Positions 1-26,058 of a stretch of 64,000 bases of DNA are shown in pieces (position 1 is the first letter of the stretch; every line of letters begins with the position of its first letter). Source of the stretch: Hemiscyllium ocellatum (lineage: Eukaryota). The translations under genes and the position numbers were made by a program. Location of the stretch: assembly GCF_020745735.1 (NCBI RefSeq), contig NC_083409.1:12833259-12897258 (forward strand), read 5' to 3'. The notes under the pieces are model-generated. The model was not told the DNA's origin and did not search any database. It saw only the letters and a program-made list of their open reading frames with translations.

Positions 1-30
1 GATTCAAGGTGGAAGGAGAGAGATTTGTAC

Positions 31-79
31 CTGCGATACAGAATGCCAGGGGCCAGATCAGCTGGATGTGTGAAATCAT
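31..79 (-). CDS. IGKV: Leader exon 1 of a second, oppositely oriented kappa-type Ig light-chain V gene (MISHIQLIWPLAFCIA-G, phase-1 donor); the V exon lies beyond the left window edge
   Basis: Reverse complement of 12216-12264 with one substitution (TGT ATC vs TGT GTC). ATG at 79-77, GCAG|GTACAA donor at 31/30. The 30 visible intron bases match 12265-12294. Confidence 0.88.
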
Positions 80-139
80 GGTGTGTGCTCCTGTCCCTGT
101 GCCTGGTTCCTGATAAACTCTCCCTTCACTGGGCTCTGC

Positions 140-234
140 TTTATAAAGCTGCAGCCTGTGAGAGTCTGACTGGGTGTTCCTCAGTATGTAAATGGCATCA
201 GGCAGAGAGAGCCACGTCAGCCCCTCACACTTCC
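140..234 (-). promoter_or_regulatory. Promoter of the left (minus-strand) V gene: TATA, variant octamer, CRE-like element, Ets/PU box
   Basis: TTTATAAA 140-147; ATGTAAAT 186-193 (ATTTACAT on minus); ACGTCA 214-219; CACTTCC 228-234 (GGAAGTG on minus). Mirror image of 12058-12155. Confidence 0.7.
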
Positions 235-2379
235 TTCTCTCGCTCTCTCGCGCTCTCTCAGAGAATCATTGATGTGAACAACATTGAATGAGGCCATTTA
301 GCCCATTGTGTCTGTGTGAGTAAACAAAGATCTGATGACACTAATCCCATCCTCCAGCTCTTGACCTATCACCCTGGGGGCTACAGCAACACAAGGGAAT
401 ATCTAAACACTGCTCCAGTGTCACGAGAGTTTGTGACTCAACCAGCCTTTCAGGCAGTGAGTTCCAGACTCCCACCACCTTCTGGGTGAAAACATTTCTC
501 CTCAATTCTCCTCTCACTCCAATTTGACTGGGCCTGGACTCACTCAAGTTCAGAAGGATGAGAGGGAATCTGATTGAGATGTATAAAATTCCAACAGGGC
601 TGGGCAGAGAGGAGGTTTCCTCTGGTTGGGAAGTCTGGAATCAGGGGACTCAGTCTCAGGGGGATAGAGGGTAGACCATTTAGGACTGAGATGAGGAAAC
701 ATTTCTTCACTCAAAGGGTAGGACAACTGTGGAACCCAAGGAACTGAATAAATTCAAGAAAAGGAGAGAGATAATTGTTTTGTATTTTAACAGCATGAAG
801 GGAATGGGGAGAAAGCAGGAATATGGTTTTGAGATGGAGGATCAGCCATGATCATACTGAATGACAGAGCAGGCTCAAAGGGCCGAAAGGCCTACTCCAG
901 TTCCGAGTTTCTGTGTCCATGTCTGTGTTACCTGGGACACAGGTTATTGAGTACTTTACTGATATATAAAGTGCCTTCTTACCCACGCTATCACTGCCCC
1001 AAATAATCTTATCCCCCTCTATCATGTCCCCTCTCAGCCTTCACTGCTCCAAGGAAACAATCCCAACCTTTCCAAGATTTCCCCACAGCTGACCCTCCAT
1101 CCCAGGCAGCATCTTGGTAAATCTCTGCACCCTCTCAAGTACAGTCACATCCTTCCCAGAATGTGGTGACCAGTACCTATCCACCTCTCTCTCTCTCTCT
1201 CTCTCTCTGTCTCACATCTGCCACTTCTTTCTCTCTATCCCTCTCTCTCCTACTGTTAATCTCTTTCATGTTCTCTCTCTCTCTCACTCTGTCTCATAGC
1301 CACACTCCCCAATTCACTCATGCTTTCTCACTCCATCTCATAATTTTTATTTTTCCATCTCTCACTGTCTCCATAACTCCTTCCCCCTTTCGCTTCAATT
1401 TAAATCCTCTGTTTATCTCTCCTCTCTATACCTCCCTCTGTCTCTCTCCCTCCCTCTCTGTATTCCCAATCTACAGTCGCACTCCCTCCCTCTCTGTCAT
1501 TCTGTTTCTAATCATACTCATGTCTCTCACTTTCTCTCTCTCTCTCTCTCTCTCTCGCTCTCTCTGTCTCTCACACACACACACACACACGTACAGACAC
1601 TCACCCTTTGTCTCTGACTCACTTCTCTCTCTTTCTCACAGTGTCCCAGGTTGTGGCAGTTGAATTCAGGATGAATCTCCCTCTCTCTGCCCCACTCATG
1701 GATGTTAACCCTTGACCCCAGAAGCATGTTTTCTCCGAGAGTAAGGCCCCATTTTCCACATTGACCTGGATTTGGCCTCTCTCAGAAAGATGGCTAGATT
1801 CTTGTCAAATGAAGGGCAGTTCTGTGCTTTTGGCCTGTTCTCACTGGGGACTGGTTTGGACACAAAGCTCATTCCATGAAGGCCCTGCAGAGAGAGGAGA
1901 TCCTCAGGCCATCAGTGTGAGCTGGGCGGGGGGGGGGGGCGCAGCACAGGTTCTGACCCACTGATCCAGCCTGTCCATTCACAATATTTTCCAATCCCTT
2001 CCCCTCTCCTACCCCTCTCTTTCCCTTTCCATGATCAGTCTCTGAGTCAGGGTGTTTTACTGGGATGTGGGTTGAACCATTACACAGTTACAACAGAAAG
2101 GAACTGAACCCCACACTCACCTTGGAGTCCATGATGCACTGGACTCTCCTACAGAGTCCAGTAAACATGGCCTCCTTCCTGCAAGAGCCTCCACTAGAGA
2201 CCAGTAAACATGGATCTCCTTCTGACTGGATCCTCCAAGACAGATCAATAAATATGGGCCTCCTAATCACTGGAACTTCCAATGGAGATGAGTAGATGGT
2301 TGAGTTTTTGAAGAAGTAAGCAAGAAGATAGGTAAAGATGGAGTAGTACACTCTGTCTACATGGAGTTAATACAAGGTT

Positions 2380-3520
2380 CCCTATGGTAGACTGCTCAGT
2401 AAGATTATATCACACAGGATCCAGGGAGAGCTCACCAATTGGATATAAAATTGGCCTGATGATAGGAGGCTGAGGCTGGTGAGAGAGGGTTGTTCTTCAG
2501 ACTGGAGGCCAGTGACCAACTGCCTGTCAAAAGAATCGATCCTGGATCCACTGTTGTTCATCATTTATATGAGTAATTTGGATGAGAAAATAGCAGGAAT
2601 GGTCAGTAAGTTTGTGGCTGATGTTAAAATTGTTGGCATAGTGGACAGGGAAGAAGGTTATCCAAGAGTGCAATGTCATCTTGATCAACTGGGCCAGTGG
2701 GTCAACATATCCAGATGGAAATTTTGATAAATGGAAGGAGTTGCATTTTGGGAAGACAAACCAGGGCAGGAATTACACAATTAATGGTAGAGCCATGGGG
2801 AGTGTTGTTGAACAGAGAGACTGAGGGGTACAGGTACATAGTTCCTTGGAAGTGGGGTCACAGGTAGACAGGGTGGTGAAGAAAGTATTTGGCATGCTCA
2901 CCTACACTGGTCAAAGCAGGGAGTACAGGAGCTGGGACATCATGTTACAGCTGTACAAGGCATTGGGAAGGCCACATTTGGGCACAGTACATTTCTGCTC
3001 ATCCTACTCTCAGAAGGAAGTTATGACAGTGGTTTGAATACAAGAAAGATTAACAGGGATGTGACAAAGATTGGAGGATTTGAATTACAAGATGAGGATG
3101 AATAGGCCAAGATGTTTTTCCAAGGAATGCAGGAGATTGAGGGGTGACCTTATAGAGGTTTATAGAATCATGAGGGTCATAGATAAGGTGAATAGTCAAA
3201 GTCTTTTCCTCAGGGTAGGAGAATCCAGTACTAGAAGGAGTAACTTAAGTTGAGAGGGGAAAAAATTAGTAGGAAACTGAGAGGCAGCATTTTCACACAG
3301 AGGTTAGTGTGTATGTGTAATGAGCTGCCAGAAGAATTCGTAGAGGTGAGGACAATTACTACATTTCAAGGACATTTTTACAGGAACATGGATAGGAAGG
3401 ATTTAGAGAGAATTGAGCCAAACACATGCAAATGGGACTAGTTCAGTTTTGGATACTTGGTCGGCATGGATGAGTTGAGCTGAACGGCCTGGTCCCATGC
3501 TGTAAACCTCTATGACTCTT
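2380..3520 (+). mobile_element. CR1-type LINE, 3' part of ORF2 (RT C-terminus) and 3' UTR, degenerate
   Basis: Frameshifted fragments DWRPVTNCLSKESILDPLLFIIYMSNLDE..SKFVAD, RRLRGDLIEVYRIM, FTQRLVCMCNELPEE. Boundaries approximate. Confidence 0.8.
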
Positions 3521-5650
3521 TAATGATGTATACATGGACCACCTTCCAATAGACACCAATAAACATGGACCTCTTTCCACTGGAACCTCCAATAGACACC
3601 AATAAACAGGGACCTCCTTCCCACTGGATGCTCCAGAAGAGACCAGTAAACATGGCCCTCCTTCCCTCAGTACTATCCAGCACCTGAGCTGCAAACCCCA
3701 CATCCTCTCCATCACGTATGCCTCTTATTTCAATCTCAACAACATTGTGTCTGCACTACCTCGCCCCCTTGACCACAGAAACCCTAATTCCTGCTCGTCC
3801 TGCTCCCTAACTCTATGATTCTAATGTCCTCTCCTAGCTTCCTAAAGCCATATTCCATAAACTCCAATTTGTCTGATATGGAGTGGGCCCTTCCCTGTCT
3901 TATCCATCTCTCAATCCAGAATGACCCCTGACCTCACTGCCAGCCAATTGCCACCATGGCCTCCCTCCGTCTGTGTCCTGCTGCAGACTCACATTCCCTC
4001 CCTCCCCCTTCCATCTTCTGTCTCTGGTCTCCTGCCCATTGCTGCTTGCTCCATCCCACCATTGACAGCAGAGCCTTCAGACCCCTACAGCATGCTCTCG
4101 GACTTCCTGCCCTTGATCCCTCCCCCTCTGAATGGTTGTGCTATTGAATATACTGTTCAATCCCATCACTTTTGGTTCACTGTTCCCTTGCCATTGATTT
4201 GCTGAATTATTCCTCATCAGTAAATCTAGTCTGGCCTGTTCCCTGAGTTGGTTCAAGAGAGTTTTCCTTGAGAAAACACTCTTCTGTAAACTGGGTTGTC
4301 TGTTTCTCCCAGTCTTTGTGTAAAGGTGAGTCTAAGTATGTGTAAGCTCTAAAACAGCACAGACAGAGGTCACTGGGTTAATTGCGACTGTTAGTCAAAT
4401 GAGTCCAATGAGTCCCATTAACCCAGCCCTTCCTGTATAACCCTGCAATTATTTCCTTTTCAGCTATTTCTCCAAATGCCCTTTTGAAAGTTGCTGTTGA
4501 ATCCACTTCCACTCACCTTGCAGACAGTCATCATGAACTCGCTGGATAAAAAATGTTCCTATCTTCTCTCTTGTGCTTTCGACTCTTTCTGAAATGTGTG
4601 CCCTTGGGTTACTGACCCTCCTGCCTGGAGAAACAATTTGTCCTGTATTTACTGCATCCAAACTCTCTAATTGTGAACCCCTCATTGAGTGAGACCTATT
4701 TCCAGCACAGGGGGAGAACATTCAGCCTGTCAGGGAAATGCTGTCATTTCATGGAGCAATCCAGTCAGTCCCACCCTCTCCCCTACTCGACCCCCAGGGC
4801 CTTGCAGGTTTATTTCCATCAAGAGCCCATCCAATCTGCCATTGCAATCACTGAGTGTCTTCACCTGTCACACCTGAATGGGCACAAATTTCCAAGACTT
4901 TGACAATTGCTGCTAAAATCAAAGTTCTTTCTGACATTCCATATCTCTTGCCCAACAGAATGTAAGATAATCTCAAAGGGAAGACAGGATTTTGTCTCCA
5001 CACGGTCTGTGCTGTGGTCACTCTTACTGATACTGTCATGGACAGATACACCAACAGCAGGTTGGTGAAGGTGATAGTGAGTATGTTTTTCCCTCTTGTC
5101 GGTTCCCTCACCCCCTGTCCCAGGTCCAGTCTCGCAGCTGAATCAGGTGGAGCGTGACCAGTTTGCTCAGTAGTGATGCTTCTGAGCAGCTTTTGATGGT
5201 GGACTTTGAAGTCCCTTACTCAGGGTATATCCTGCATCATTCCCATCCTCAGTGCTTCCTCCAAGTGTTGTTCAACATGGAGGAGGACTGACTGCTCAGT
5301 TGAGGTTGGAGGGGAGGGCGGTGCTATGTGGTAATCAGCAGGAGGTTTCCTTCCCCATGTTTGACCTGCTGTCATGAGGCTTCATGGATTCCATAGTTAA
5401 TGGTGAGGACTCTCAGGGCAACTCCCTTCCGACTGTACACACCACTGTGTTGCCTTCCCTGCTTGGTCTATCCTGCCAGTTATAAACTGAACGAGGGAAC
5501 AATTCTGTGCAGGTTTCACACCTTGGAGACAGAGCTGCTGCTGGATTCTGTTTCTGATCTCCGAGTGCAGGCGTGTGTGTTTGTGAGAGAGTGACTGACA
5601 CTTTTTCCAAAACTGTGCTGTTTCTGCAAAAAATAAATCCTAGAACCAGC

Positions 5651-5898
5651 CTCCTGTGCTGTCAGATTCCAGGGAGAGCAGACAGTTCACAGTTTTCTCC
5701 CGTCTCAGTAACAAACACCCAGCTGCTCCGAGCTCCTTGTTTCACTTCCTCTTTTGGTGAAGTTTCAACCTTGCGATCTGACAGTCTTTGCAGTTATTTT
5801 TTACACTGGGGCTTTCTGCTGTGGTCAGAATCTCTAATAATAAGTGTCCAATCAGTGACAATCACAGCAGCTAAGAGCAGTCAGGACTGAGGAGCCAG
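5651..5898. repeat. Left arm of an inner inverted repeat (partner 6784-7031), non-TE-like, containing an Ets-IRF composite element
   Basis: Reverse complement of 6784-7031 (ORFs 5573..5890+ and 6792..7109- end in near-identical peptides). GTTTCACTTCCTCT at 5739-5752 (AGAGGAAGTGAAAC on minus); E-box CAGCTG 5720-5725. Confidence 0.9.
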
Positions 5899-6783
5899 TG
5901 TCCCTGTGAAGAAATAAAGCTGAAAGTTCCACAAAAGAAGCATTGATTCAGATCTTACACTCCACAACCATCTGATGAAGGAGCAGTGCTCCAAACGCTA
6001 ACACTTCCAAACAAACCTGTTGCATTAGAACCTGGTGTTGTGTGATTTTTAACATTTACATAACAGGCCAACACCGGCATCTCCAAATCATGGAATTGGA
6101 TGGAATTTGAGAAATGCATTTACCTTGGGTCAGGAATGGGTCTGTCTAGGAGACAGAGAGGAAGGATAATGTGCGTGTGTTCCAATGAGACAGATGTGAG
6201 TAGTGGTATTCCCAGGGATCTGTGCTGGGACCTCAGCTTTTCACGATATTTCTCAATGATTTGGATGAAGAAACAGAGAGCCATATATCCAAGATTATTG
6301 ATCACACTGAGTGAGGCAGCTTGGAGGAGGTCACAGAGATAGGGAGGGTGGAAGAACAGGGAGCAGATTGAGAACAAGGATGAGAATTTAAAAATCGAGG
6401 TGTTGCTGGATCAGGAGCTTATGTCAGTCAATGAGGATTGTGGTGGTCATGGTGGGGTGGGGAGGTTTGGGCAGGGGTATGGGGTGGACTTGGTGTGAGT
6501 TTGAAAACAGACAGCAGAGTTTGGGATGAGCTGATGTTTACGGAAGTCAGTGGCTGTGATGTGGGCCTGGATATCATTGGAATGGTCACAAAAACATGGT
6601 TGAGATTTTCAGTGGCTGATAATTGTGATGTGGAGGATTTGGGCCTCAAATCAGCCCCAAAGATGAGGCCAAAGTTGTAAAGAGTCTGGTTGAGCAGCAG
6701 ACAGTGCTCAGGGAGAGGGATGGAGCTTGTACCAGGAGCTGAAGAGGATGGCTTTGATCTTCCCAATGTGTTTCCCAGTGAGC

Positions 6784-7031
6784 CTGGCTCCTCAGTCCTG
6801 ACTGCTCTTAGCTGCTGTGATTGTCACTGATTGGACACTTATTATTAGAGATTCTGACCACAGCAGAAAGCCCCAGTGTAAAAAATAAATGCAAAGACTG
6901 TCAGAGCACAAGGTTGAAACTTCACCAAGAGAGGAAGTGAAAGGAGGAGCTCGGAGCAGCTGGGTGTTTGTTACTGAGATGGGAGAAAACTGTAAACTGT
7001 CTGCACTCCCTGGAATCTGACAGCACAGGAG
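6784..7031. repeat. Right arm of the inner inverted repeat, containing an Ets-IRF composite element
   Basis: GGAAGTGAAA 6933-6942; CAGCTG 6957-6962; reverse complement of 5651-5898. Confidence 0.9.
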
Positions 7032-7633
7032 GAGGCCATTCAGCCCATCATGCCTTTGAATGACCCAGTGAATCCCACTGCTCCCCTCTCTCTCCCCATA
7101 ACCCAGCAAATCTTTCCTTTACAGTTCAATCTCCAATTCTCTCTTATAGACCTCATGTCCACAGAGTGAGACTGCCCTGAACCTGGGCTTCAAATTGGCA
7201 TCTCATTCATTCATTGGGAGACAAACTGCCTGGGCTAGGAAATGGAGTTCAGGACCCTGAACATTCCCTCTCCCCTCCTGAGGAACACTTCATTTGGTTT
7301 TGCATATTCACTTGTGGGAAGTGGGCTTCACCGGCTGGGCCAACATTTTTTACCCTGTCCCTAGTTACCCTGGAGAAGGCGGTGGGAACCTGACTTTTTG
7401 ACTATAGTCCACAAGACGTAAGTTGACCCACAATGCCGTTGGGGAGAGAATGCCAGCATTTTAACCCAGCAAGTCTGAGGGATCAGCGACATATTTCCAA
7501 GTCCGGATGCTAAGCTTTTTTGAGGGGAACTTGCAGCTCACAGTGTTCCCATGTATCTGCTGCTCTTGTTCTAAATGGAAGTGAACGTGGGTTTGGAGGG
7601 AAACCAAAAGAACTGCAGATGCTGTAAATCTGA

Positions 7634-7793
7634 GACAAAAATAGAAAGTGCTGGAAAAGCTCAGCAGGTCTGGCAGCATCTGTGAAGAGAAATCAGAGTT
7701 AATATTTCATGCTCAACCTGAAATGTTAATTCTGATTTCTCTCCAAGATGCTGCCAGACCTGCTGAGCTTTTCCTGCAATTTCTATTTTTGTC
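7634..7793. repeat. Near-perfect ~160-bp fold-back built from a Penelope-type terminal repeat
   Basis: 7634-7680 vs 7747-7793: 2 mismatches in 47 nt. Inner arms gagaaatcagagttaatatttca / tgaaatgttaattctgatttctc flank a ~9-nt loop. The motif GCTGGAAAAGCTCAGCAGGTCTGGCAGCATC resembles the terminal repeats at 43810 and 44930. Confidence 0.75.
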
Positions 7794-10700
7794 CATGGGT
7801 TTGGAAGGTGCTATCTGAAGATCAGTGATGAATTTCTGCAGTGCATCTTTTCGATAATACACACTGCTGCTATGGAGCGTCAGTGACGGTGAGTTTGGGT
7901 GTTTTGAGAATGCGATGCCAATCAAGGAGTTTGCTTTGCTCTGGATGGTATCAAGCTTTTTGAGTGGATAAGAAAGACATAGGATACAATCGACATAGAT
8001 AGGAAAGGTTTCAAGGGATATGTGTGAAATGCAGGCAAATAAGATGAGTTCACTTCAGAAAACCTGGTCAGCACGTAGAAGTTTGGCTTAAGGGTTTGTT
8101 CCTGTGCTGTATGACTCTGTGAACGTTGTTGGAGCTGCACCTGTCCAGGCAAGTGGGGAGTATTTGCTCACACTCCTGACTTGGTTGACAGGCTTTGGGG
8201 GATCAGGAGTTGAATTACTGGATGCAGTATTCCTAGCCTCTAACTTGCTCTTGTAACCACTGTGTTTCTTTGGTGAATCCAGTTGTGTTTCTGGTCAATG
8301 GCACCTCAAGAATGTTGATCGTGGGGATTCAGTGATGGTAATAGCATTGATTGTCAAGGGGCGATGTTAAGTTTGTCTCTTATTGGTGATGGTGATTGGC
8401 TGGCATTTGCATGGCACCAATGGGAAATGTCACTTCTCAGACAAAACCTGGATATTGTCCAGATATTGTTGCATTTGCACGTGGACTGCTTCAGTATCTG
8501 AGGAGTTGAGAAGAGTGCTGAGCATTATGCAATCTTTGGCAATCATCCCCATTTACGAGTTTGCCTTGAGTTGCAATATCTGTTTGGAGTCTGTCCTATT
8601 TAGTACGGTGATAGTACCACAAAACACAATGGAGGGGATTCTCAATGTGAAGGTCAGACTTTGTTTCCACAAGGACTGTGTGATGGTCACTCTTACCAAC
8701 ACTGTCAAGGACAGATGCATCTACAGCCACAAGATTGGTGAGGATGGGGTCAAGCATCTTTTTCCATCTTTTGGTTCCAGCTGCAGAGCCAGTCCCTCAG
8801 CTACATCCATGAGGAACCAACCAGCTCGATCAGTAATGCTGCTGCCGAGCCACTCTCAGTGGTGGACATTGAAACCCCCCACCCAGAGTACACTCTCTGC
8901 TGTCATCACCCTCAGTGCTTCCTCCAAATGTTGTTCAACACCCAGGAGAGACTGATTCATCAGCCGAGGGAGCAAGATATCTTGTAATCACCAGGAGGTT
9001 TCCTCGCCCATGTTTAACCTGGTGTCATGAGGTCCAGAGCCAACTTTGAGATTTCCCAGGGTAACTCCCTTCTGGCTGTAGACCACTGTGTCATCAGCTC
9101 TGCTGGGTCTGCCTTTCTGGTGGGACAGGACACATGCAGGGACAGTGATGGTAGTGTCTGGGACATTGTCTGTATGGTTCTGTGAGTATGACAGTGTCAG
9201 GCTGTTGCTTGACTAGTCTGTGAGACAGCTTTCCTGAATTTGGCACTAACTCCCAAATGTCAGTAAGGAGGACAGAGCAGGGTAGACAGGACTGTTTCTG
9301 TCATTGTCTTTTCGGTGTCTAGATCGATGCCTGTGGTCCGTCCGGTCTCATTTCTTTGTTGAAACATTGTCACAATTGATAAAACTGAGAGCCTTGCGCG
9401 GCCATTTCAGAGGGCACTAGAGAGTCAACCACATTGCTAGAGGACAGTGCCGTGTACCCCGGCAGTACATTCCCACCTCCCCCACTTCCCCATTCTGTAT
9501 ATGGAAGGCGGAAGCCTGCCAGCAGGATATTCAACCGCAGGAGCTATCACAGCCCGTGTGCAATTCTGTCCCCACATTAAATCCACACAAATCTTGAATT
9601 CACATAACTCCTTCAATATCCAAACATTCCAAGAATGTTCACAAAGTTGCAGTAAGAGGGATGGGGGAGAGGGTGGAGGAACATAAGAACTAGGAGCAGG
9701 AGCAGGCAATTCAGCCCCTTGAGCCCACTCCACCATTTAATACAATCATGGCTGATCCCATCTCAGACTCAACTCCACTTTCCTGCCCACTCTCCATCAT
9801 CCTTTAACCCATTACCCATTAAATATCTGTCCATCTCCTCCTTGGTGTGAGACAGGGAAGGGACCACTCCATTTCAGAAAAGACTGACCATGGAAGGGGA
9901 AGGAGAGGGGAAGGGATTGGAACATGTTGTGAATGGACAGGATGGGTCAGTGGGTCAGAGCTTGTCCTGTGCCTCCAACGCACGCTGATGGCCTGAGGAT
10001 CTCCTCTCTCTGCTAGGCCTTCATGGAATGAGCTTTGTGTCCAAATCAGTCCCCAGTGAGAATCGGCCAACAGCACAGAACTGCACAGAACTGCCCTTCA
10101 TTTGACCAGAATCTGTCCATCTTCCTGACAGAGGCCAAACCCTGGTCAACGTGGAAATAGGGCCTTACTCCAGGAGAAGACAGGGGTCAAGGGTTAACAT
10201 CCATTAGTGGAGCAGAGCAGAGGGAGATTTATCCTGCATTCAACTGTCACCACCCAGGACACTGTCAGAAAGAGAGAGCAGTGAGGCAGAGAGAGAGATG
10301 GAGGGAAAAATAGTGAGTGTGGGCGTGTGTGTGGGCGTGTGTGTGTGTGAGAGAGAGAGAAAGAAAGAAAGAAAGTGAGAGAGAGAGATAGAGGGACGAG
10401 CATCTGATACAGTGTAAGATATGTGAGGGGACCGAGAGAGTTAGAGGGAGGTAGAAATGGTGAGGCTGAGGGATAGAGAGTGAAACAAGATGTGAGACAG
10501 TGTGACTGAGAGGGATGGAGAGAGAGAAAGAGACAAGGGGAGAGAGAGAGAGAGTGAGAGACAGGATGGGTGTGAGACTAAGCATGAAGAGAGTTGAGAG
10601 GGAGGGTAGGGTTGAGTGTGAGAGAGAGAGATGAGTATGGGTAGATTTATAATGACAGAGAGAGAGGGAGAGAGACTGTAAATTGGGAGGTCGAGAGGGA

Positions 10701-12026
10701 AGGAGAGAGAAAGAGGGAGGAATAGAGAGTGACAGATAACAATTGGAGGCTTTTAATTGAAGTGAGAGAGGGAGCGAGTAACAGAGACAGTGAGAGATGG
10801 AGAAACAGATGATAAGATGGAGTGAGAAAGCATCAGTGAGTTGGAGAGAGTGGCTATGAGACAGAGTGTGTGTGTGTGTGTGAGAGAGAGGGAGAGAGAG
10901 AGAGAGAGAGAGAGAACATGAAAGAGATTAACAGTGGGAGAGAGAGGTAGAGGTAGAGAGAAAGAAATGGCAGATGTGAGTCAGAGAGAGAGAGGGACAG
11001 GTCCTGGTCACCACACTCTGGGAAGAATGTGATTGTACCTGAGAGGGTACAGGGGAGATTTCCCAGGATGCTGCCTGAATGTGAGCTTTGAGCAGTGAAG
11101 GCTTAACAGGGACCTGATAGAGAGGGATAAGATTATTCAGAACAGTGACAGGGTAGGTAGGATGGCACTTTTTACATGAGTAAAAGACTTAAAAACCTGG
11201 TACAGAGATTGAAGGTAACACAGACATGGACACGTAGAAACTTGGAGCAGCAGTAGGCCATTCGGCCCTTTGAGTCTGCTCTGTCATTCAGTATGATCAT
11301 GGCTGTATCAATTTTTGAATGTCATAATTTCTTCGAGGGTCCGTGTGGGCTTGTCGGGCCAAATGGCCTGTTTCCACACTGTAGGCATTCTATGATCTAT
11401 GGCTGATCCTCTCTCTCAAAGCCATATTCCTGCCTTCTCCCCATTCTCTTCAAGTTGTTAAAATGCAAAACAATTATCTCTCTTGTTTTCTTGAATATAT
11501 TCAGTTCCTTGTCCTCCACAGCCTTCAGTGGTAGCGAATTCCACAGGTTGACCACCCTCTGAGTGAAGAAATGTTTCCTCATCTCAGTCCTAAATGGTCT
11601 ACCCTCTATCCCCCTGAGCCTGTGTCCCCTGGTTCCAAACTCCCCAACCAGGGGAAACCTCCTCCCTGCCCAGCCCTGTTACAATTTTATATGTTTCAAT
11701 CAGATCCCCTCTCATCGTTCTGAACACGAGTGAGTCCATGGCCAGGCGAGTTGGAGAATTGGAGAGTGAGAGGAGAGTTGAGAAGAAATGTTTTCACCCA
11801 GAGGGTGGTGGGAGTCTGGAACTCACTGCCTGAAAGGCTGGTTGAGTCACAAACTCTCGTGACATTGGAGCAGTGTTTAGATATTCCCTTGTGTTGCTGT
11901 AACCTCCAGGGTAATGGGCCAAGAGCTGGAGGATGGGATTAGTGTCATCAGACCGCTGTTTACCAGCACAGACACAATGGGCCAAATGGCCTCATTCAAT
12001 GTTGTTCACATCAATGACTCTGAGAC

Positions 12027-12057
<31 letters not shown>

Positions 12058-12155
12058 AGAGGAAGTGTGAGGGGCTGACGTGGCTCTCTCTGCCTGATGC
12101 CATTTACATACTGAGGAACACCCAGTCAGACTCTCACAGGCTGCAGCTTTATAAA
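12058..12155 (+). promoter_or_regulatory. V-gene promoter: PU box, CRE-like element, variant octamer, TATA
   Basis: AGAGGAAGTG 12058-12067; TGACGT 12076-12081; ATTTACAT 12102-12109 (1 mismatch to ATTTGCAT); TTTATAAA 12148-12155, about 60 nt upstream of the ATG at 12216. Confidence 0.72.
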
Positions 12156-12215
12156 GCAGAGCCCAGTGAAGGGAGAGTTTATCAGGAACCAGGCACAGGG
12201 ACAGGAGCACACACC

Positions 12216-12264
12216 ATGATTTCACACATCCAGCTGATCTGGCCCCTGGCATTCTGTGTCGCAG
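12216..12264 (+). CDS. IGKV: Ig light-chain leader exon 1 (MISHIQLIWPLAFCVA-G)
   Basis: ATG in CACCATG context, hydrophobic 16-aa signal peptide, phase-1 donor GCAG|GTACAA; 186-nt intron ending cccctcag at 12450. Confidence 0.95.
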
Positions 12265-12450
12265 GTACAAATCTCTCTCCTTCCACCTTGAATCTTTAGC
12301 TGCTCTCCATTTCACTCCAATTCCACTGACTTGTGATTGAAGGGAAAATGCTGAAACCAGAGGAATGCTCAGTGTCTCCAACAATCTCTCATTTGACCGG
12401 CTCTTTCTGTGACAGTTCTGACTTCACTGTGTTTCTCTCTGACCCCTCAG

Positions 12451-12747
12451 GTATCAGTGGGGACATCACCATGACCCAGTCTCCCCCGGTGCTGTCAGTG
12501 GGACTGGGCCAGACCGCAACCATCACCTGTAAGGCCAGTCAAAGCATTAGCAGCTACCTTGCTTGGTACCAGCAGCAAGAAGGTCAGAAACCCTCTCTCC
12601 TGATCTACAATGCAGCAACTCGATTCACAGGAGTCTCCGAGAGATTCACCGGCAGTGGATCAGGGACCAGTTTCACCCTGACAATCAGCAACGTTCAGAA
12701 TGAGGATGTCGCTGACTATTACTGTCAGCAGTATAGCAGCGGGTCTT
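12451..12747 (+). CDS. IGKV: Leader 2 plus kappa-type (shark type III/NS4-like) V segment, intact: (G)[98 protein letters not shown]
   Basis: Canonical Cys-Trp-Cys, WYQQ and D-x-A-D-Y-Y-C motifs; open frame; followed directly by a consensus 12-spacer RSS. Confidence 0.97.
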
Positions 12748-12775
12748 CACAGTGACACAGAGCTGTACAAAAACC
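12748..12775 (+). other. Recombination signal sequence, 12-nt spacer (V side)
   Basis: CACAGTG (12748-12754) - ACACAGAGCTGT - ACAAAAACC (12767-12775); perfect heptamer and nonamer. Confidence 0.97.
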
Positions 12776-13285: not shown

Positions 13286-13659
13286 GTAAGTAAACCTCAA
13301 TCCTCTGTTACTAACCCTGTCAATACTGAAACACACTTTCTAAAATACAGTTGCTGATTTGTTGAAGGTGTTAGTGGGGAGCTGCAGTGAATGAAATGGT
13401 TGATTGAGGAGCACTGTGTCTAACAGGGTGTCCAGCTGTATTTCTTTACTTTCATGCCCTCTTTAAAAAAAGCAAGATATAAGTCAGTAAGTTTTACTCA
13501 CTGTGTGGAGGAGCTCTGTCCATTTACAGCCTGTGGTCCCATTCCTGCAGCATGGAGTGAAATCAGTGAGTAGCCTCCTGCCAGTCTCAGTGTGACGGAT
13601 ACGGGCAGAGTTTGATGTGAGCTCTGGCTCCCTGTCCCAGTCTCTGATCTCACTGACCT

Positions 13660-13695
<36 letters not shown>
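13660..13695 (+). repeat. (CAG)12 microsatellite at the 5' end of the J-C intron
   Basis: Directly read: 12 uninterrupted CAG units. Confidence 0.95.
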
Positions 13696-13697
<2 letters not shown>

Positions 13698-15244
13698 CAG
13701 TGAGACACCGAGCTCCCACCTCCCCCAGCTTTAACTCTGCTCAATCACACAATCACAGAATTGTTACAGTGCACAAGAAGGCCATTCCGTCCATCCTGTC
13801 TGGACTAGCTCTCCGAATGAGCAATTGACTGAGTGTCATTCTCCTGCCTTCTCCCTGTCACCCTGCACATTGTTCCTTTTCAGATAACAGTCTCATTCCC
13901 TTCGGAATGTTTTAATTGAAGCTGCCTCCACCACACTCTCAGGCAGTGCATTCCACACCTTAACCACCCACTGGCTGAAAATGTTTTCCCTCATCTCACT
14001 TTTCTTACTTTTCCAATTACTTTCAATCTGTGGCCTCACAGTCTCAATCCTTTCACAAGTGGAATCATTTTCTCCCAATTTACTCTGTTCCAGGCCCCTC
14101 CTGATTTTGAATTTCTGGAACAATTCTCCTCGCTGCCTTCTCCAAAGACTTGGAGGTGCCGGTGTTGGACTGGGGTGGACAAAGTTAAAAATCACACAAC
14201 ACCAGGTTATAGTCCAACAGGGGGTTTATTTGGAAGCACCAGCTTTCGGAGCATCCCTCCTTCATCAAATGATTGTCAGCGGCGCACCAAAAGCTAGTGC
14301 TTCCACATCAACCTGTTGGACTATAACCTGATGTTGTGTGATCTGTAACTTTCTCCAAAGAAGACAGTCCCAGATTCTCCAATCTATCTTCAGAACTGAT
14401 ATTCCTCATCCCTGGAATGATCTTTGTGCATATGTTTACCAGCTCTACAAAACATTCACCTCCTTCCTGCATTATTCACATTATTTATGTCCCTCATGAT
14501 TTTATAAACCTCTGTAAGGTCACTCCTCAGCCTCCGGCACTTCAGGGTAAAAGATCTCAGCTCTTCCAGCCACTAATGTTCACAGAGTCAGACAGCGTGG
14601 AAACAGATCTTTCAGTCTAACTCCTCCATGCTAACTAGATATCCAAAACTGACCTCATCCCATTTGCCAGCATTTAGCCCACATCCCTCTAAACCCTTCC
14701 TATTCATGTACCCATCCAAACATCTTTTAAATGTTATAATTGTATCCGTCTCCAGCACTTTCTCTGACAGCTCGATCTGGACACGCACCACCCTCTGTGT
14801 GACAAGTTACCCCTTAGGTCCCTTTTGGATCTTTTGCCTCTCATCTTAAACCTATACCCTCTAGTTTTACATTCCCTTTCCCAAGGCAAAGACCTGGGAT
14901 ATACACCCTGTCCATGCCTGTCAAGATTTTATAAACATCTATAAGGCCACCCCTCAGTCTCCGATCCTGCAGGAAAAATAACCTCTTCCGACAGTTCAAA
15001 CCCTCCAGTTCCAGGCAACATCCATGTAAATCTTTTCTGCAGAATTTTAAGTTTAACAGCATCCTTCCTATCACAGGATGATCAGAATTGTCCACGTTAT
15101 TCCCAAAATAGCCTCACCAATTTCCTGTACAGCTGTTAATGATGTCCCAACTCTGATACTTAGTGCAGTGACCAATAAAGGCAAGTGTACCCAACACCTT
15201 CTTCATCTCCCTGTCTCCCTGTGACTTCACTGTCAAGGAATAAT

Positions 15245-15568: not shown

Positions 15569-18500
15569 CCTCTAGCCGAAAAGTCGATTTTTCTGCTCCT
15601 CGGATGCTGCCTGACATGCTGTGCTTTTCCAGCACCAGTCTGATCTAAACTCTGGTTTCCAGCATCTGCAGTCTGCACTTTTGTCCATTTGCCACACCTC
15701 TGCCCATTTCCCCAAATGATCAAGGTCCCACTGTACTCTCAGATAAGCTTCTTCACTATCCACTGTACCACCAATTTTGGTGTCATTTACAAACTCGCCA
15801 TAATTCCTATATTCACATCCAAATCATTTATTTAAATGATAAAAAGCCAAGGGCCCAGTCCTTGTGGCACACAGCTGACATCTGATCTCCAGTCTGAAAA
15901 GCAACCACTTACCACCACTCTCTGTCTCCTATCTTGAAGTCATTTTTTTTTTACCCAAATGGCTAGCTCCCCCTGGATCCCATGTGGCCTAATCTTACTA
16001 ATCAGTCTATCATGTGGAACCTTGTCAAATGCTTTGCTGAAGTCTATATAGACAGTGTGTACTGTTTTGCCTACATCAATCTTCTCTTCAAACAATCTCA
16101 ATCACGTTAGTCAGACATGATTACCATGCACAAAACTGCATTGTTTGTCCAAATGCATGTAAATCCTGTCCCTCAGAACTCACTCCAATAACTTACCCAG
16201 CAATGACTTCAGGCTCACTGGATTAGATTTCCCTGGCTTTTCCTTACAGCCTTTCTTAAATAATGGCTAACATTAGCCAACCTCTCTGGTTCTCCAGAAC
16301 CTCACTCATGGCTGTCAATCAGAAACATACCTCAGCAAGGGATCCAGCCATCTCTTTCCTAGCTTTCCACAATGTCCTGGGATACACCTGATCAGGTCCT
16401 GGAGATTTATCTACCGTCTTGCACTTTAAGAAATCTTCTTCTATAATGTGGACTTGTGTCAAGACATTACTATTTATTTCCCAAGTTCCCAAATTTCCAT
16501 GTCTTTCTCCATGATAAATACTGACCTGGAATATTCATTTAAGACCTAAACCATTTCCTGTGGATCCACCCAGAGGTACATTGTTCATCTTCATGGGGCC
16601 CTATTCTCTCTCTAGTTACTCTTTTGCCCTTTTCTTATTTACCATAATTCTACCACTTTTGCCCTTGAGTAAGTTCAGGAATTGTTTGCCCTCCTTCAAA
16701 TGTATCTCGACTATACCTGGTCCACATCCTCTACTATTCTTTTCAGGACTTTCCTGCCAACCTTTGATCCAACTTTATTCAGATCTGAGACATCCATATC
16801 TTATAGAAGCTGGCATTTTCCCCAGTGAAGATGTTTTACCCTGAAAAGGCCTTTGTTCTTTTCTACCGTCACCCTCAACTTTGTGATACAATGATCACTC
16901 TTCCTTAAGTGTCCTCTCACTGACACGTGATCCACTTGGGCCTCCTCATTCCCAAGATCCAGATCTAGCAGAGCCTCCTTTCTCATTGGACTGGAGACAT
17001 GCAGCTGGAGAAAATTCACATGAACACACTCTCACGACTCTGGCCCCTCTGTCCTTCACACTGCTACTACCCCAGTCTATATTCAGAAATTAAAGAAATT
17101 CCACCCCCCCCCCCAACCCCATTTGTAATGACTATTATATTTGCAGGTCACTGTAAATTCCTTGCAAATGTATTCCTCTAAATCCTTCCCATTGGGTGGT
17201 GACTTATTGACTGCACTGATGATTCTGTGGACCTTGGTGTTCCTCTCTGACAGTCCCTCCTGACTCCCACAGCTCTGCCAAGTTAGTTTAAACCCTCTCC
17301 AACAGCACGAGTAGATCACCTCAATGGAGCTCAGTGCCAGCTCTGTTCAGGAGCAACGCTGTCTGGTCTATCCAGGTCCCATTACCCCAGACCCAGTCCC
17401 GATGTCACAAGAATCTAAAACCCTCCCTCCTGGATCCTCTTCCCAGCCCCACAGTCACTTGTGTTATCCTCCTGCTCCTCTTGTCACTTGCCTGGGGCAC
17501 TGGGAGTAACCTGAAGATTCCTACTTTTGAGTTCCTGATGTTATTTCCCTTCTGAGCTCCCTAAATTCTGACTGCAGGACTACATCCCTTTTCTCCCTCT
17601 GTCACTGGGACCGATGTGGACCACGACTGCTGCCTATTCCCCCTCTCCCCTCAGGGTGCTCTGCAGTCGCTCAGTGACATCCTTGACGCTGGCACCAGGG
17701 AGACAACACACCATCCTGGATTCCCATCTGCAGCTGCAGAAACACCTATCGATGCCCTCAGTCTCAAATCTCCTTTTACGATCACTCTTCCAGTCTTGCT
17801 AATACCACCCCACCACCCCACCACCCCTCACCTCCCCTCCCCCCCCCACCACCGCCCCGGCAACCCCCCATTATAGCTGAGTCACCAGTGATGCCAGGGA
17901 CTTGGCTCTGGCTGCACTCCCCAGATGAACCATCATTCTCATCAGGATTCTGAACTGTATCCTGGTTGGAGAGTAGGATGCCTGGGGACTCCTATACTAG
18001 CTGCCTGATCCTTTTGGACTGTCTGCTGCTCCCCCATTCCCTCTCTCCCTGCATACTCTGAGGCTGCAGAGTTACCACATCTAGAAACGTGCTCTCCACG
18101 GAGCTCTCAGCCTCAGAGACGCTCTGCACTGACACCAGCTGCTGCTCAAGCTCCAAAACCCAGAGCTCTAACTGCTGTCACAGACTTCACTTCCTGTACT
18201 CATGGTATTCCAGGAGCTGGGAAACATTCTGAAATTCCCACATGGATGCACACTCTCTCCACTCTTTGTTTGTCTCTTGGCAAAGTTCTGATGACAAACA
18301 GCTCCAGCAGGGCTCACAGTCCAGTGGGTTCAGTGTTCCAGGGTTTTGGGGAAACTCTCCAGAAGTCTTTAAGAAATAGGAGCAGAAATCAGCCATTCAG
18401 CCCATTGAATCTGCTCTGCCATTTGATCTTGGCAGATATGCTTCTCACCCCCATTCTCCTGCCTATTCCACAGGAACGTTCGATCCCCTTCACAATCACG

Positions 18501-23600: not shown

Positions 23601-24728
23601 AAAAACAGTTTATCCCATGTGTCTTCTGAACCACCTCACTGACCTGCATTAATCACCATGGCCACATCTTCCACCTCCACACCCATCTGACTTCCAGCTT
23701 CAAAATGATGAGAGACATTCCTTCATTATCTGAGAAACAGATAGAAACATCAAACACAGGAGCAGCAGTAGGCCATTCGGCCCTTCAAGGCCTGCTCCAC
23801 CCTTCAATATGATCATGGCTGTTCATCCAACACAGTCCCCTGTTCCTACTTTCTCCCCACATTCTTTGATCCCTTTAATCCTAAGAACTGTATCTAATTC
23901 CTTCTTAAATACACATTGCATCTAATTCCCTTTTGCTGGAAAAATGGATGACAATTATTGGGTTGTTGTTTTTTGACCAGTATGGACACAATGGGCTGAT
24001 GGGTCTTTTGGGCCCCTATGACTCTATTGTTATTTATTATGAATAACTGGGTACCAAGGGCTGACCCTGTGGCACCCTAAGTTGTTATTACCTGCCATTC
24101 AGAAAAAGACTCATTCTTTCTGTGCTGTCTGCCAACCAGTTCCCAATCCATGTCAGTACGTGAACCCCAATCCTCTTGTTTCTTTGGTCTAGATGTGGGA
24201 GTCCCACCCTTACTCATTGTGGGAACAGATTCTGAACAGTCTGTCTCATCCTTTGAGGGCTCCCACTGCCCTGACACTGATTTCCCATCATGCCATTGGT
24301 TCCCATCCACTTTTACCAAAGCACCGCACAGTTTAGTAAAATGAAAACTTTTACACTTGCTCCATGGTTCTCCATTTCCATTCCTCCTCTCAATCTCACT
24401 GAGTTCTAATCAGTGTCACTAAAATGCTTCCCCATCGATAGCCCTTCCAGCTTCCCACATTCATTCCATAACTGATGGTCCAAAATTGTCCCTTCTCTCT
24501 CTGCTGCTTCACCATCACCTTCTCAGGGACATCTAGGGACGGTAATGAATGCTGGCCCTGCCAGTGACACTCAGATCGCAAGAAGCAATTTGAACAGTGT
24601 CTGTTCATTTGTTGGATTTATTCTGTATTGACGAAGAATGTTCAAAAAGATCGTATTGTCAGTGAATATTGTGAGGGTTGAATTCCCTTCAAATGTCAGG
24701 GATTAAAATTGTTTCTTTTGTCTTTCAG

Positions 24729-25057
24729 TCCGTGACAACTCTCAGCCCAAGCTGACCCTGCTGCCCCCCTCCCCTGAGCAGATTAATGCCAAGGACACTG
24801 CCACCCTGGTGTGCCTTGCCAATCACTTCTATCCCGATGAGCTGGAGGTGCAGTGGAAGAAAGACGGTGCAGTCATTTCGGACGGGGTTCAGACCAGCAA
24901 CTACCTGCGAGCTTCGGACAGCACCTACAGTGTCAGCAGCCTGCTGACCCTCTCTGGGTCTGACTGGGAGTCCAACGCTCGCTTCTCCTGTGCCCTCACC
25001 CACGTGACCCTCCCCTCTCCCCTCAGCAAGAGCATCAGGAGATCAGAATGTGTGTAG
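24729..25057 (+). CDS. IGKC: Kappa-type constant exon, intact: (I)RDNSQPKLTLLPPSPEQINAKDTATLVCLANHFYPDELEVQWKKDGAVISDGVQTSNYLRASDSTYSVSSLLTLSGSDWESNARFSCALTHVTLPSPLSKSIRRSECV*
   Basis: Acceptor cttttgtctttcag|TC, in phase with J; C1-set Cys/Trp/Cys; penultimate Cys for the interchain bond; TAG 25055-25057. Confidence 0.97.
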
Positions 25058-25582
25058 AGTGTTGGAGACAGTCCACAGAGGAGACACAACTTTAAATAGA
25101 ACAGGGCTGAGCTGGCAGGACAAAGGTCATTGTCAGCACTGAATTTCAACTCTCTTCCTTCTCAGGACTGCTCAGGGAACCTTCTGAGGTTTGGATGTAA
25201 AAGCAGGTCATTGCGACAGTGTCGAGGGAGCTTTACACTGTGTCAAACCCCATGCTGTCCCTGTTCTGGGAGTGTTTGATGGGGACAGGGTTGACTTGTG
25301 ATGCCAAGTAAAATCTCTTGAAGTTGCTGAAGACTGTCAGCTGTACAAAACAATGTGAACCTCAGAAGTCTCTGCTTCAGTAAACCAGATCTCCTTCCTG
25401 CTCAGCCGCCAGTTCCAATTTAAGGTTTTGTCACTGTTTAAAGGGACAGGATTCTCATGTTATTGAGCAATTCTCCACAAGTGTTTTCCTTAAACACCAT
25501 TGTGGCTGTGAATTTGAGCAGCTTCCTCTGTCTGGGCTGTTAATTGCAGTTTTTTTTCTGTCAATGTGAATGTGGAAAAGGG

Positions 25583-25588
25583 AATAAA
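25583..25588 (+). terminator. Polyadenylation signal of the kappa transcript
   Basis: First AATAAA found after the stop, followed by a CA and a GU-rich element (gtctctgtctggtgtgtg). Retained at 61328 in the C relic. Confidence 0.75.
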
Positions 25589-26058
25589 GGTGAAGATTCA
25601 GTCTCTGTCTGGTGTGTGCTTTGGAAATAGATAACCTTCCCCACCCCCCAGTTGATTGGCTGCATTTCAGCAGGTCATTGTCAAGATTGGCTGGTTGGCC
25701 TGTCAATCAATTACAATCATTAATCATTAATCATTTTCAAATGATCCCTTTGATCAGGAATTTATGCAGGTTACAAGATTCCAAAAAGAACAGAAACCGA
25801 CAGCTGTTAGGACTCAATAAGTACAATCCGACACATTCCCTCTTCACTCTGTTGGTCCAGGCCCAGCTGATGGGATCGCACTGTGCAATCTCTGCTGCAT
25901 GTTGGGTAGCTGCTGAAACAATCTTCGGCCAATCACTGACATTGTCAGCTGTGTCTCTCTGAGGTAAAAACAAGGACTGCAGATGCTGGAAACCAGATTC
26001 TAGATTAGAGTGGTACTGGAAAAGCACAGCAGGTCAGGCAGCATCTGAGGAGCAAGAA

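What the first reader, a model, noticed from the sequence alone, without database searches (positions are those of the whole stretch)
5651..7031. Duplicated 248-bp element with an Ets-IRF composite motif: candidate upstream B-cell enhancer
Seen: the only sequence conserved in the middle of the palindrome is a 248-bp non-TE-like block present twice, 5.3-5.7 kb from each ATG. Both copies keep GAGGAAGTGAAA (5740-5751 on minus; 6931-6942), an adjacent CAGCTG E-box and a TGTTTGT forkhead-like site, while all flanking DNA differs. Established: GGAANNGAAA is the PU.1/Spi-B plus IRF4/8 element of the mammalian kappa 3' and lambda enhancers, where it lies near E2A sites. Inference: a shark light-chain enhancer placed 5' of V, one per cluster, which I do not recall being described.
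Basis: partly seen in the sequence, partly recalled or inferred. Interest (0 to 1): 0.72.

Follow-up and report, generated by a model that had tools for sequence, protein, structure and literature searches.

The report
Conserved upstream block of shark kappa genes
A 260-350 base non-coding block lies a few kilobases upstream of shark antibody kappa light-chain genes, changes two to four times more slowly than the DNA around it in three shark species, and carries binding-site motifs typical of B-cell enhancers. It is therefore a credible but untested candidate for the genes' own on-switch.

Summary
Arms 5650-5910 and 6772-7032 form a 261-nt inverted repeat, 95% identical, with only two copies in the 64-kb window. 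They lie 5.6 and 5.2 kb from the two head-to-head kappa V start codons.

I first suspected a transposon with long terminal repeats. Related loci argue against that. In bamboo shark (Chiloscyllium punctatum) and zebra shark (Stegostoma tigrinum) contigs, the same block sits 2.4-6.4 kb upstream of a kappa V, in the same orientation. Three of the four copies there sit so; the fourth is the inverted partner copy. No copy lies elsewhere in the 180 kb I could read.

Core 6782-7000 differs far less than its homologous flanks in all three comparisons: 5.5% against 21% (p=5e-9), 10.5% against 19% (p=0.01) and 18% against 25% (p=0.07). The E-box CAGCTG is intact in 6 of 6 copies and the Ets-IRF motif in 5 of 6, always 14 nt apart.

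- The full block is about 350 nt (6679-7032), and the left copy is truncated.
- Its outer ~25 nt are the start of an old dispersed repeat.
- The 95% identity of the two copies probably owes something to gene conversion.
- One bamboo-shark cluster shows no block.

Function is untested. The scan has reported this same kind of block upstream of other kappa clusters of this genome. I found no paper that describes it.

The parts
6679..7032 (+). Full right-hand copy of the conserved block, facing the V gene at 12216.
   Evidence: It is 95.1% identical over 349 nt to C. punctatum L001 3268-3615. It is 87.8% identical to S. tigrinum L005 7295-7634, and 78% and 75% identical to the two L002 copies.
6782..7000 (+). 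Most constrained core. It holds RUNX-like GACCACA (6856), kB-like GAAAGCCCC, TGCAAA, the Ets-IRF site GAGGAAGTGAAA (6931-6942), the E-box CAGCTG (6957-6962), GTTTGTTACTGAGA and GAGAAAACTGT.
   Evidence: Core against flank mismatch is 5.5% vs 21.1%, 10.5% vs 18.9% and 18.3% vs 24.8%. The invariant runs come from the six-copy alignment.
5650..5910 (-). Left-hand copy of the block, inverted and facing the partner V whose ATG is at 79 (-). It lacks the inner ~100 nt of the ancestral block.
   Evidence: It is 95% identical to 6772-7032 and 96.3% identical to L001 3373-3615. The inner part, 6679-6781, has no counterpart on the left.
5911..6678 (.). Spacer between the two copies. It is transposon debris: LINE reverse-transcriptase-like fragments and a very high-copy short repeat at 5964-6160.
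   Evidence: Evidence comes from the ORF fragments, the depth spike and loose ends at 6004/6053, and 75% homology of 6100-6688 to L001 2460-3033.
7007..7293 (+). Ancient copy of the dispersed AGGCCATTCrGCCCATC repeat. Its first ~25 nt form the outer end of the block.
   Evidence: Family alignment. The copy is shared with L001 (84%), L002b and L005.
12040..12752 (+). Presumed target gene: kappa V promoter (octamer variant ATTTACAT, TATA-like), leader ATG at 12216, and V exon ending at the RSS at 12748.
   Evidence: The promoter and leader are 95% identical to L001.

Best explanation
The block is a constrained non-coding module that belongs to the kappa V-J-C cluster unit of orectolobiform-type sharks. 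It lies 2.4-6.4 kb upstream of V, in a fixed orientation, and comes as an inverted pair where two clusters sit head to head.

Most likely it is a lymphoid cis-regulatory element, an enhancer. On this reading an Ets factor (PU.1/Spi family) and an IRF4/8-type factor bind GAGGAAGTGAAA. An E-protein binds CAGCTG 14 nt away. Further factors bind the invariant TAGAGAT-CTGACCA(CA), TGCAAA and TTACTGAGA stretches. Together they would open and activate the adjacent V promoter.

An upstream position can work in a cluster-type locus, because V-J joining removes only about 500 bp and never separates the element from its gene.

**Shown:** the repeat, its position, its constraint, and the retention of the motifs.
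**Inferred:** factor binding, enhancer activity, and which gene is the target.
For: **Position.** Six copies in three species are each upstream of a kappa V or in the mirrored partner position. No copy lies elsewhere in 116 kb of loci plus the 64-kb window.

**Constraint.**
- Core against flank mismatch is 5.5% vs 21.1% (p=5e-9), 10.5% vs 18.9% (p=0.01) and 18.3% vs 24.8% (p=0.07).
- The core is also below the 10-12% divergence of the closest counterpart loci, L003 and L004.

**Other species.** Exact 31-mers of the block are held by runs of other species at 0.46-0.50. Own-species runs hold 0.54-0.64. The surrounding 2.1 kb scores only 0.20-0.24 in those other species.

**Motifs.** The E-box is intact in 6 of 6 copies and the Ets-IRF site in 5 of 6, with no indel between them.

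**Rarity.** Against zebra shark, few non-coding stretches of the cluster reach 90% identity. They are the block, the promoter, stretches by J and in the J-C intron, one short window at 18141-18260, and one stretch 3' of C.

**Not coding, no known RNA.** One-base indels in L002b rule out a reading frame. There is no Rfam match.

**Background.** IRF4 was discovered as PU.1's partner on the Ig kappa enhancer, and IRF4/IRF8 act on light-chain enhancers through such composite sites (PMC10390622).
Against: - No functional data of any kind.
- The Ets-IRF motif is not enriched in the window: 6 matches against 3.5 expected. The motif reading is post hoc.
- Constraint is moderate. The block changes at about 0.3-0.7 of the flank rate, and the third comparison is not significant.
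- The motif-rich half, 6901-7032, is slightly less conserved than 6782-6900.
- One copy, L002a, has lost the Ets-IRF site. One cluster, L004, shows no block.
- Known Ig light-chain enhancers lie 3' of J or C, not 5' of V.
- Only one subfamily of kappa clusters in one shark order was sampled.
Confidence: 0.55

Rival explanations
1. The block is a constrained cis-element of another kind. It could be the promoter or first exon of an upstream non-coding (germline) transcript. It could be a boundary between the two divergent clusters. Or it could target recombination or somatic hypermutation rather than act as a classical transcriptional enhancer.
For: The position and conservation evidence is the same as for the main explanation. 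Runs guessed to be RNA, from three other species, hold 11-36% of the block's 31-mers. The block sits between head-to-head clusters. In L002, whose VJ is fused in the germline and needs no rearrangement, the two copies are the most decayed.
Against: My regular-expression scan found no CTCF-like core. There is no conserved splice donor or clear initiator. Hypermutation-targeting elements in birds overlap enhancers anyway, which is my own knowledge.
Confidence: 0.2
2. The block is a neutral relic with no function. On this reading the 95% inverted repeat reflects recent gene conversion, or a secondary inverted duplication, between the two upstream regions. The cross-species similarity would reflect slow shark substitution rates and mixed orthology.
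For: The left copy groups with the right copy at 95.6% identity, yet its outer flank is of the L002a type. So the block's tree disagrees with its flanks, as conversion predicts. The repeat's outer edge falls inside an old transposon copy, so it is a breakpoint and not a functional edge. The L002 comparison is not significant.
Against: Conversion within a genome cannot raise identity between species. The core differs by 5.5% from a bamboo-shark cluster whose flanks differ by 21%. That is also below the 10-12% seen between the closest counterpart loci. The zebra shark shows the same pattern. The bamboo-shark copies themselves differ by 20-33%, so they are not being homogenised.
Confidence: 0.17
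3. The 1383-bp unit 5650-7032 is a transposon or foldback element with 261-nt terminal inverted repeats, or the arms are copies of a dispersed repeat.
For: The layout is an inverted repeat around 861 bp of transposon-rich DNA. The whole region is repeat-dense, and summed depth over the arm bins is 3-6 times that of the lowest bins.
Against: There is no target-site duplication: CCAG precedes the left arm and AGGC follows the right arm. L001 and L005 carry a single copy with the same right-hand flank. The left and right flank types are each conserved in another species. No copy lies away from a kappa V upstream region in 180 kb. By contrast the true dispersed repeat gives 16 hits in 64 kb.
Confidence: 0.04
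4. The block encodes a structured non-coding RNA or a small protein-coding exon.
For: A stop-free frame of about 108-110 codons crosses each arm. The minus-strand consensus fold has z = -2.3. Possible RNA runs hold the block's words.
Against: There are three single-base indels inside the block in L002b. There is no Rfam match at E<=1. The plus-strand consensus fold has z = -0.7, and the minus-strand value is marginal.
Confidence: 0.04

Closest known systems
Mouse and human Ig kappa 3' enhancer and Ig lambda enhancers, with their PU.1/Spi-B plus IRF4/IRF8 composite sites
   Same: Both have a GGAANNGAAA Ets-IRF composite next to an E-protein site in a compact module of 200-350 bp attached to a light-chain gene. 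IRF4 was found as PU.1's partner on the kappa enhancer (PMC10390622).
   Different: The shark block lies 5' of V, not 3' of C. It occurs once per small V-J-C cluster rather than once per large locus. I did not test sequence homology to the mammalian enhancers. Binding and activity are untested.
Teleost Ig enhancers: IgH Emu3' of catfish and zebrafish, and light-chain cluster enhancers reported in Atlantic cod (from my own knowledge; the library search did not retrieve those papers)
   Same: They are enhancers serving Ig genes of fishes, including cluster-type light-chain loci, and rely on E-box and octamer-type sites.
   Different: Those elements were defined by reporter assays and lie downstream of C or within the locus. 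This block is upstream of V and is defined only by conservation.
Chicken Ig light-chain enhancer and hypermutation-targeting (DIVAC) region (my own knowledge)
   Same: It is a compact element with E-box, IRF/Ets, MEF2 and NF-kB-type sites that controls both transcription and mutation of a single V-J-C unit.
   Different: It is 3' of C. There is no evidence here for any role in mutation.
Blocks reported by this scan upstream of other kappa clusters of the same genome (s1-203484, s1-228462, s1-228455, s1-216793 and others)
   Same: They have the same size range (180-355 nt), the same 5-6 kb upstream position and the same motif set. They are very probably paralogous copies of this block.
   Different: I could not read those windows, so I did not check identity with this block. 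They are AI notes and not independent evidence.

Membership tests
Ig light-chain enhancer of the Ets-IRF composite type (kappa 3' / lambda enhancers) | Ets-IRF composite sequence GGAANNGAAA is present | tested here: met
   GAGGAAGTGAAA is at 6931-6942 (+) and 5740-5751 (-). The motif count in the window is not above chance (6 against 3.5).
Ig light-chain enhancer of the Ets-IRF composite type (kappa 3' / lambda enhancers) | Composite site and neighbouring E-protein site are retained across copies and species | tested here: met
   The Ets-IRF site is intact in 5 of 6 copies (L002a has GTGGAAATGAAG). CAGCTG is intact in 6 of 6. The 14-nt spacing has no indel.
Ig light-chain enhancer of the Ets-IRF composite type (kappa 3' / lambda enhancers) | Location downstream of J or C | tested here: not met
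   The block lies 2.4-6.4 kb upstream of the V leader in all loci.
Ig light-chain enhancer of the Ets-IRF composite type (kappa 3' / lambda enhancers) | Cooperative binding of PU.1/Spi-B with IRF4/IRF8, and B-cell-specific enhancer activity | not testable with these tools
   This needs EMSA or ChIP, reporter assays and chromatin profiling.
Ig light-chain enhancer of the Ets-IRF composite type (kappa 3' / lambda enhancers) | Sequence homology to the mammalian enhancers beyond short motifs | not tested
   No tool here holds mammalian enhancer sequences, and I did not type any from memory.
Conserved non-coding element under purifying selection | Fewer substitutions than homologous flanking DNA in independent comparisons | tested here: met
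   The core differs by 5.5%, 10.5% and 18.3%, against 21.1%, 18.9% and 24.8% in the flanks (p=5e-9, 0.01, 0.07). It is also below the 10-12% closest-counterpart baseline.
Conserved non-coding element under purifying selection | Retained position and orientation relative to the same gene | tested here: met
   The E-box end of the block faces the nearest V in all six copies. L004 is an exception with no block.
Transposon with terminal inverted repeats / dispersed repeat | Target-site duplication and many copies in unrelated contexts | tested here: not met
   There is no target-site duplication. There are only two copies in the window and four in 116 kb of other loci, all upstream of kappa V or in the partner position. 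L001 and L005 have single copies. A genome-wide census was not possible.
Structured non-coding RNA | Match to a known family, or a consensus fold better than shuffled alignments | tested here: inconclusive
   No Rfam match. Alifold z is -0.7 on the plus strand and -2.3 on the minus strand.

The most novel reading that the evidence does not exclude
The block is the cluster-autonomous B-cell enhancer of shark kappa genes, which would make it the first antibody-gene enhancer identified in a cartilaginous fish. It would use the same Ets-IRF plus E-protein logic as mammalian light-chain enhancers, but from a position upstream of V. That would date this regulatory logic to the origin of light chains. 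It would also give a handle on how one of many clusters is chosen for expression.
Probability: 0.45. Interest if true: 0.75.

Novelty: new variant of a known kind. Interest (0 to 1): 0.62.

Why it matters
How sharks switch on, rearrange and exclude their many small V-J-C antibody gene clusters is an open question. In five completed searches of the held library, three of which targeted sharks, I found no paper describing a regulatory element for cartilaginous-fish Ig genes. This block is short, well defined and conserved, and it has a testable pair of sites. That makes the question directly approachable through reporter assays, ATAC-seq or H3K27ac profiling of shark lymphoid tissue, and binding assays with shark Spi and IRF proteins.

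If the block is active, the Ets-IRF plus E-protein logic of light-chain enhancers would predate the split of cartilaginous and bony vertebrates. It would also show that enhancer position is free to differ in cluster-type loci.

Tried and rejected
1. **Transposon with long terminal inverted repeats (my first reading).** Rejected after I found single copies with conserved flanks in L001 and L005, no target-site duplication, and no copies away from V upstream regions.
2. **Copy number from contig depth.** The region is repeat-dense and the tool warns that depth is not copy number. I could only say that the arm bins are 3-6 times the lowest bins in own-species contigs and about 10-20 times in organisms C and D.
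3. **Chromosome-level assemblies gave no DNA.** I tried Hemiscyllium, Cetorhinus, Heterodontus, the Scyliorhinus torazame draft (GCA_003427355.1) and the new C. punctatum assembly. The file or the gene range was too large. No carcharhiniform, lamniform, heterodontiform, squalomorph, batoid or chimaera locus could be tested.
4. **Findings search by sequence.** Blank.
5. **Rfam.** No match.
6. **Consensus RNA fold.** Not convincing.
7. **Coding exon.** Rejected because of frameshifting indels.
8. **Literature.** Five completed searches found no shark Ig enhancer. One search failed on syntax.

Full report
**1. What is in the window**

The window starts inside a head-to-head pair of shark kappa (NS4/type III-like) light-chain clusters. 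The right cluster has these parts:
- leader ATG at 12216;
- V exon running to 12747;
- a 12-spacer RSS at 12748;
- J at about 13251, preceded by a 23-spacer RSS;
- C exon at 24707-25054.

The partner V lies just off the window's start, with its ATG at 79 on the minus strand. The two promoter and leader regions and about 2 kb upstream form the outer arms of a palindrome, 1-2016 against 9895-12294. Identity is 97% next to the genes and falls to 73-79% in low-complexity DNA.

**2. The observation**

Arms 5650-5910 and 6772-7032 are a 261-nt inverted repeat at 95% identity, with 861 nt between them. The window holds no third copy.

The Ets-IRF pattern GGAANNGAAA occurs 6 times in the window against 3.5 expected. 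The motif alone therefore carries no statistical weight.

**3. First hypothesis: a mobile element**

An inverted repeat around transposon debris looked like an element with long terminal repeats.
- The spacer holds LINE reverse-transcriptase-like fragments.
- It also holds a very high-copy short repeat at 5964-6160.
- Laying contigs of four runs showed that the whole 3600-9500 stretch is repeat-dense.
- The last ~25 nt of each arm, together with the right flank, are the 5' end of a dispersed family marked by AGGCCATTCrGCCCATC. That family has 16 hits in the window against 0.3 expected.

So the outer edge of the repeat is a breakpoint inside an old transposon copy, not a functional boundary.

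**4. What overturned it**

*Word index.* Exact 31-mers of 6695-7044 are held at 0.46-0.50 by runs of two other species. Own-species runs hold 0.54-0.64. The same other species hold only 0.20-0.24 of the words of the surrounding 2.1 kb.

*Related loci.* I searched with the V protein and a shark C domain, then fetched the DNA around annotated homologues. Four Chiloscyllium punctatum contigs (L001-L004) and one Stegostoma tigrinum locus (L005) could be read. Larger assemblies gave no DNA.

| Locus | Block position | Identity to window 6679-7032 | Distance upstream of V |
|---|---|---|---|
| L001 (bamboo shark) | 3268-3615 | 95.1% over 349 nt | 6.4 kb |
| L005 (zebra shark) | 7295-7634 | 87.8% | 2.4 kb |
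| L002 (bamboo shark), copy b | 4949-5296 | 78% | 4.7 kb |
| L002, copy a (inverted) | 991-1350 | 75% | faces a partner cluster off the locus |

- L001 is in the same orientation as the right copy. Its flanks are colinear but only 75-84% identical.
- L002's inverted copy has an outer flank homologous to the window's left flank, 4692-5650.
- In L002 the two copies are about 3.6 kb apart.
- L003 has too little upstream DNA to test.
- L004 is the closest counterpart of the window's left half, at 87% over 1-5538. It loses homology 112 nt before the block. It has no copy within 14.4 kb of its V, though that span includes 968 N.

No copy lies anywhere else in the 116 kb of loci.

**5. Constraint**

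Segment identities of the right half against each locus peak in the block:

| Comparison | Flanks | 6679-6781 | 6782-6900 | 6901-7032 |
|---|---|---|---|---|
| L001 | 77-86% | 97% | 96% | 94% |
| L005 | 79-86% | 87% | 96% | 90% |
| L002b | 68-75% | 72% | 84% | 81% |

Mismatch counts for core 6782-7000 against the flanks 6100-6678 plus 7033-7300:

| Comparison | Core | Flanks | Fisher p |
|---|---|---|---|
| L001 | 12/219 | 177/840 | 5e-9 |
| L005 | 23/219 | 49/259 | 0.01 |
| L002b | 40/219 | 102/412 | 0.07 |

The closest counterpart loci differ from the window by 10-12% in non-coding upstream DNA (L003, L004). The 5.5% core divergence from a non-orthologous bamboo-shark cluster is therefore below even the best-case neutral level. 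The block evolves at roughly 0.3-0.7 of the flank rate, which is real but moderate constraint.

Against zebra shark, 120-nt windows reach 90% identity only in these places:
- the promoter, leader and start of V;
- the block;
- J with its RSS;
- two stretches of the J-C intron, 13471-13660 and 13781-14000;
- one short window at 18141-18260;
- the 3' part of the C exon;
- 25311-25620.

**6. Footprint**

In the six-copy alignment the invariant runs are TAGAGAT, CTGACCA, AAAAA, TGCAAA, TCACCA, CAGCT(G), TTACTGAGA and GAGAAAA.
- The E-box is intact in 6 of 6 copies.
- The Ets-IRF site is intact in 5 of 6. L002a reads GTGGAAATGAAG.
- The 14 nt between the two sites never gain or lose a base.
- Conservation collapses after about 7000, where the old transposon end begins.
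- RUNX-like GACCACA and kB-like GAAAGCCCC are kept in 4 of 6 copies. The CCAAT and MEF2-like sites are less well kept.

Single-base indels in L002b exclude a coding exon. Rfam finds nothing. A consensus fold is no better than shuffled alignments on the plus strand (z -0.7) and marginal on the minus strand (z -2.3).

**7. Why the two copies here are 95% alike**

The left and right copies have different, individually ancient flank types. The left type is shared with L002a. The right type is shared with L001, L002b and L005. Yet the left copy groups with the right copy at 95.6%, not with L002a at 74%. The equivalent pair in L002 is only 67% alike.

The simplest reading is gene conversion between the inverted copies in this lineage, limited to the stretch where they still matched. 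The case for constraint rests on the cross-species comparisons. The left copy has also lost the inner ~100 nt (6679-6781) that every other copy keeps.

**8. Mechanism**

I think the block is most likely a lymphoid enhancer of the adjacent cluster (0.55).
- *Shown:* position, orientation, constraint and motif retention.
- *Established background:* Ets-IRF composite sites recruit PU.1/Spi-B with IRF4/IRF8 on Ig light-chain enhancers (PMC10390622).
- *Inferred:* shark orthologues bind here and activate the V promoter. That promoter has the octamer variant ATTTACAT and GAGGAA about 110 nt before the ATG.

An upstream site is compatible with a cluster locus, because V-J joining deletes only the ~500-bp V-J spacer.

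The rivals are another kind of cis-element (0.20), a neutral relic shaped by conversion (0.17), a mobile element (0.04) and an RNA or coding exon (0.04).

**9. Comparison with what is known, and novelty**

The block works like, or at least reads like, the kappa 3' and lambda enhancers. It fails their positional criterion, and I did not test homology to them. So I class it as a new variant of a known kind, not a member.

Five completed literature searches found no regulatory element described for cartilaginous-fish Ig genes.

The scan itself has already flagged the same kind of block upstream of other kappa clusters in this genome, and four follow-ups reached a similar reading. These are unchecked AI notes. 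They prompted me to test the cluster association, which I did on independent public loci.

**10. Limits**

- There was no genome-wide census.
- Only three species of one shark order were sampled, and essentially one kappa subfamily plus the diverged L002 type.
- There were no expression or chromatin data.
- The coded runs guessed to be RNA that hold the block's words could not be examined.

Noticed in passing
window 13461-14000: A second conserved non-coding island lies in the J-C intron, 200-750 nt downstream of J. In 120-nt windows it reaches 92-97% identity to L001, L004 and L005, and 88% to L002. That is where a mammalian-type intronic enhancer or matrix-attachment region would sit.
   Followed up: partly
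window 25311-25620: A stretch downstream of the C exon is at least 90% identical to the zebra-shark locus. It is either 3' UTR or a 3' element.
   Followed up: no
L002:10440-10620: This bamboo-shark kappa cluster has V and J fused in frame in the germline (…DYYCMQDYSVPQTLSFGKGTKLQLS followed by a splice donor). The same cluster carries the two most decayed copies of the block.
   Followed up: partly
L004:1-14400: This bamboo-shark cluster is colinear with the window's left half at 87%, but has no block within 14.4 kb upstream of its V. Homology stops 112 nt before the expected position. The contig is a draft scaffold with 968 N in that span.
   Followed up: partly
window 39528-39614 (-) and 60612-60698 (+): Two 29-residue fragments of the 3' end of a kappa C exon lie in opposite orientation. 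They sit inside another large inverted repeat (about 40 kb against about 60 kb).
   Followed up: no
window 5964-6160 and 7540-7736: Very high-copy short repeats with sharp edges at 6004/6053 and about 7635/7709. They are shared by all four species whose contigs I laid.
   Followed up: no
window 291, 7033, 11976, 50153 and 12 more sites: A dispersed repeat family marked by AGGCCATTCrGCCCATC has 16 hits in 64 kb against 0.3 expected. One old copy abuts the block and is shared with the bamboo-shark and zebra-shark loci.
   Followed up: partly
window 6695-7044: Runs guessed to be RNA, from three further species, hold 11-36% of the block's exact 31-mers. I could not check whether the block is transcribed.
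   Followed up: no
window 12095-12215: The V promoter carries an octamer variant (ATTTACAT) beside GAGGAA, and a TATA-like TTTATAAAG. This stretch is 95-97% identical between the two clusters and to bamboo shark.
   Followed up: no
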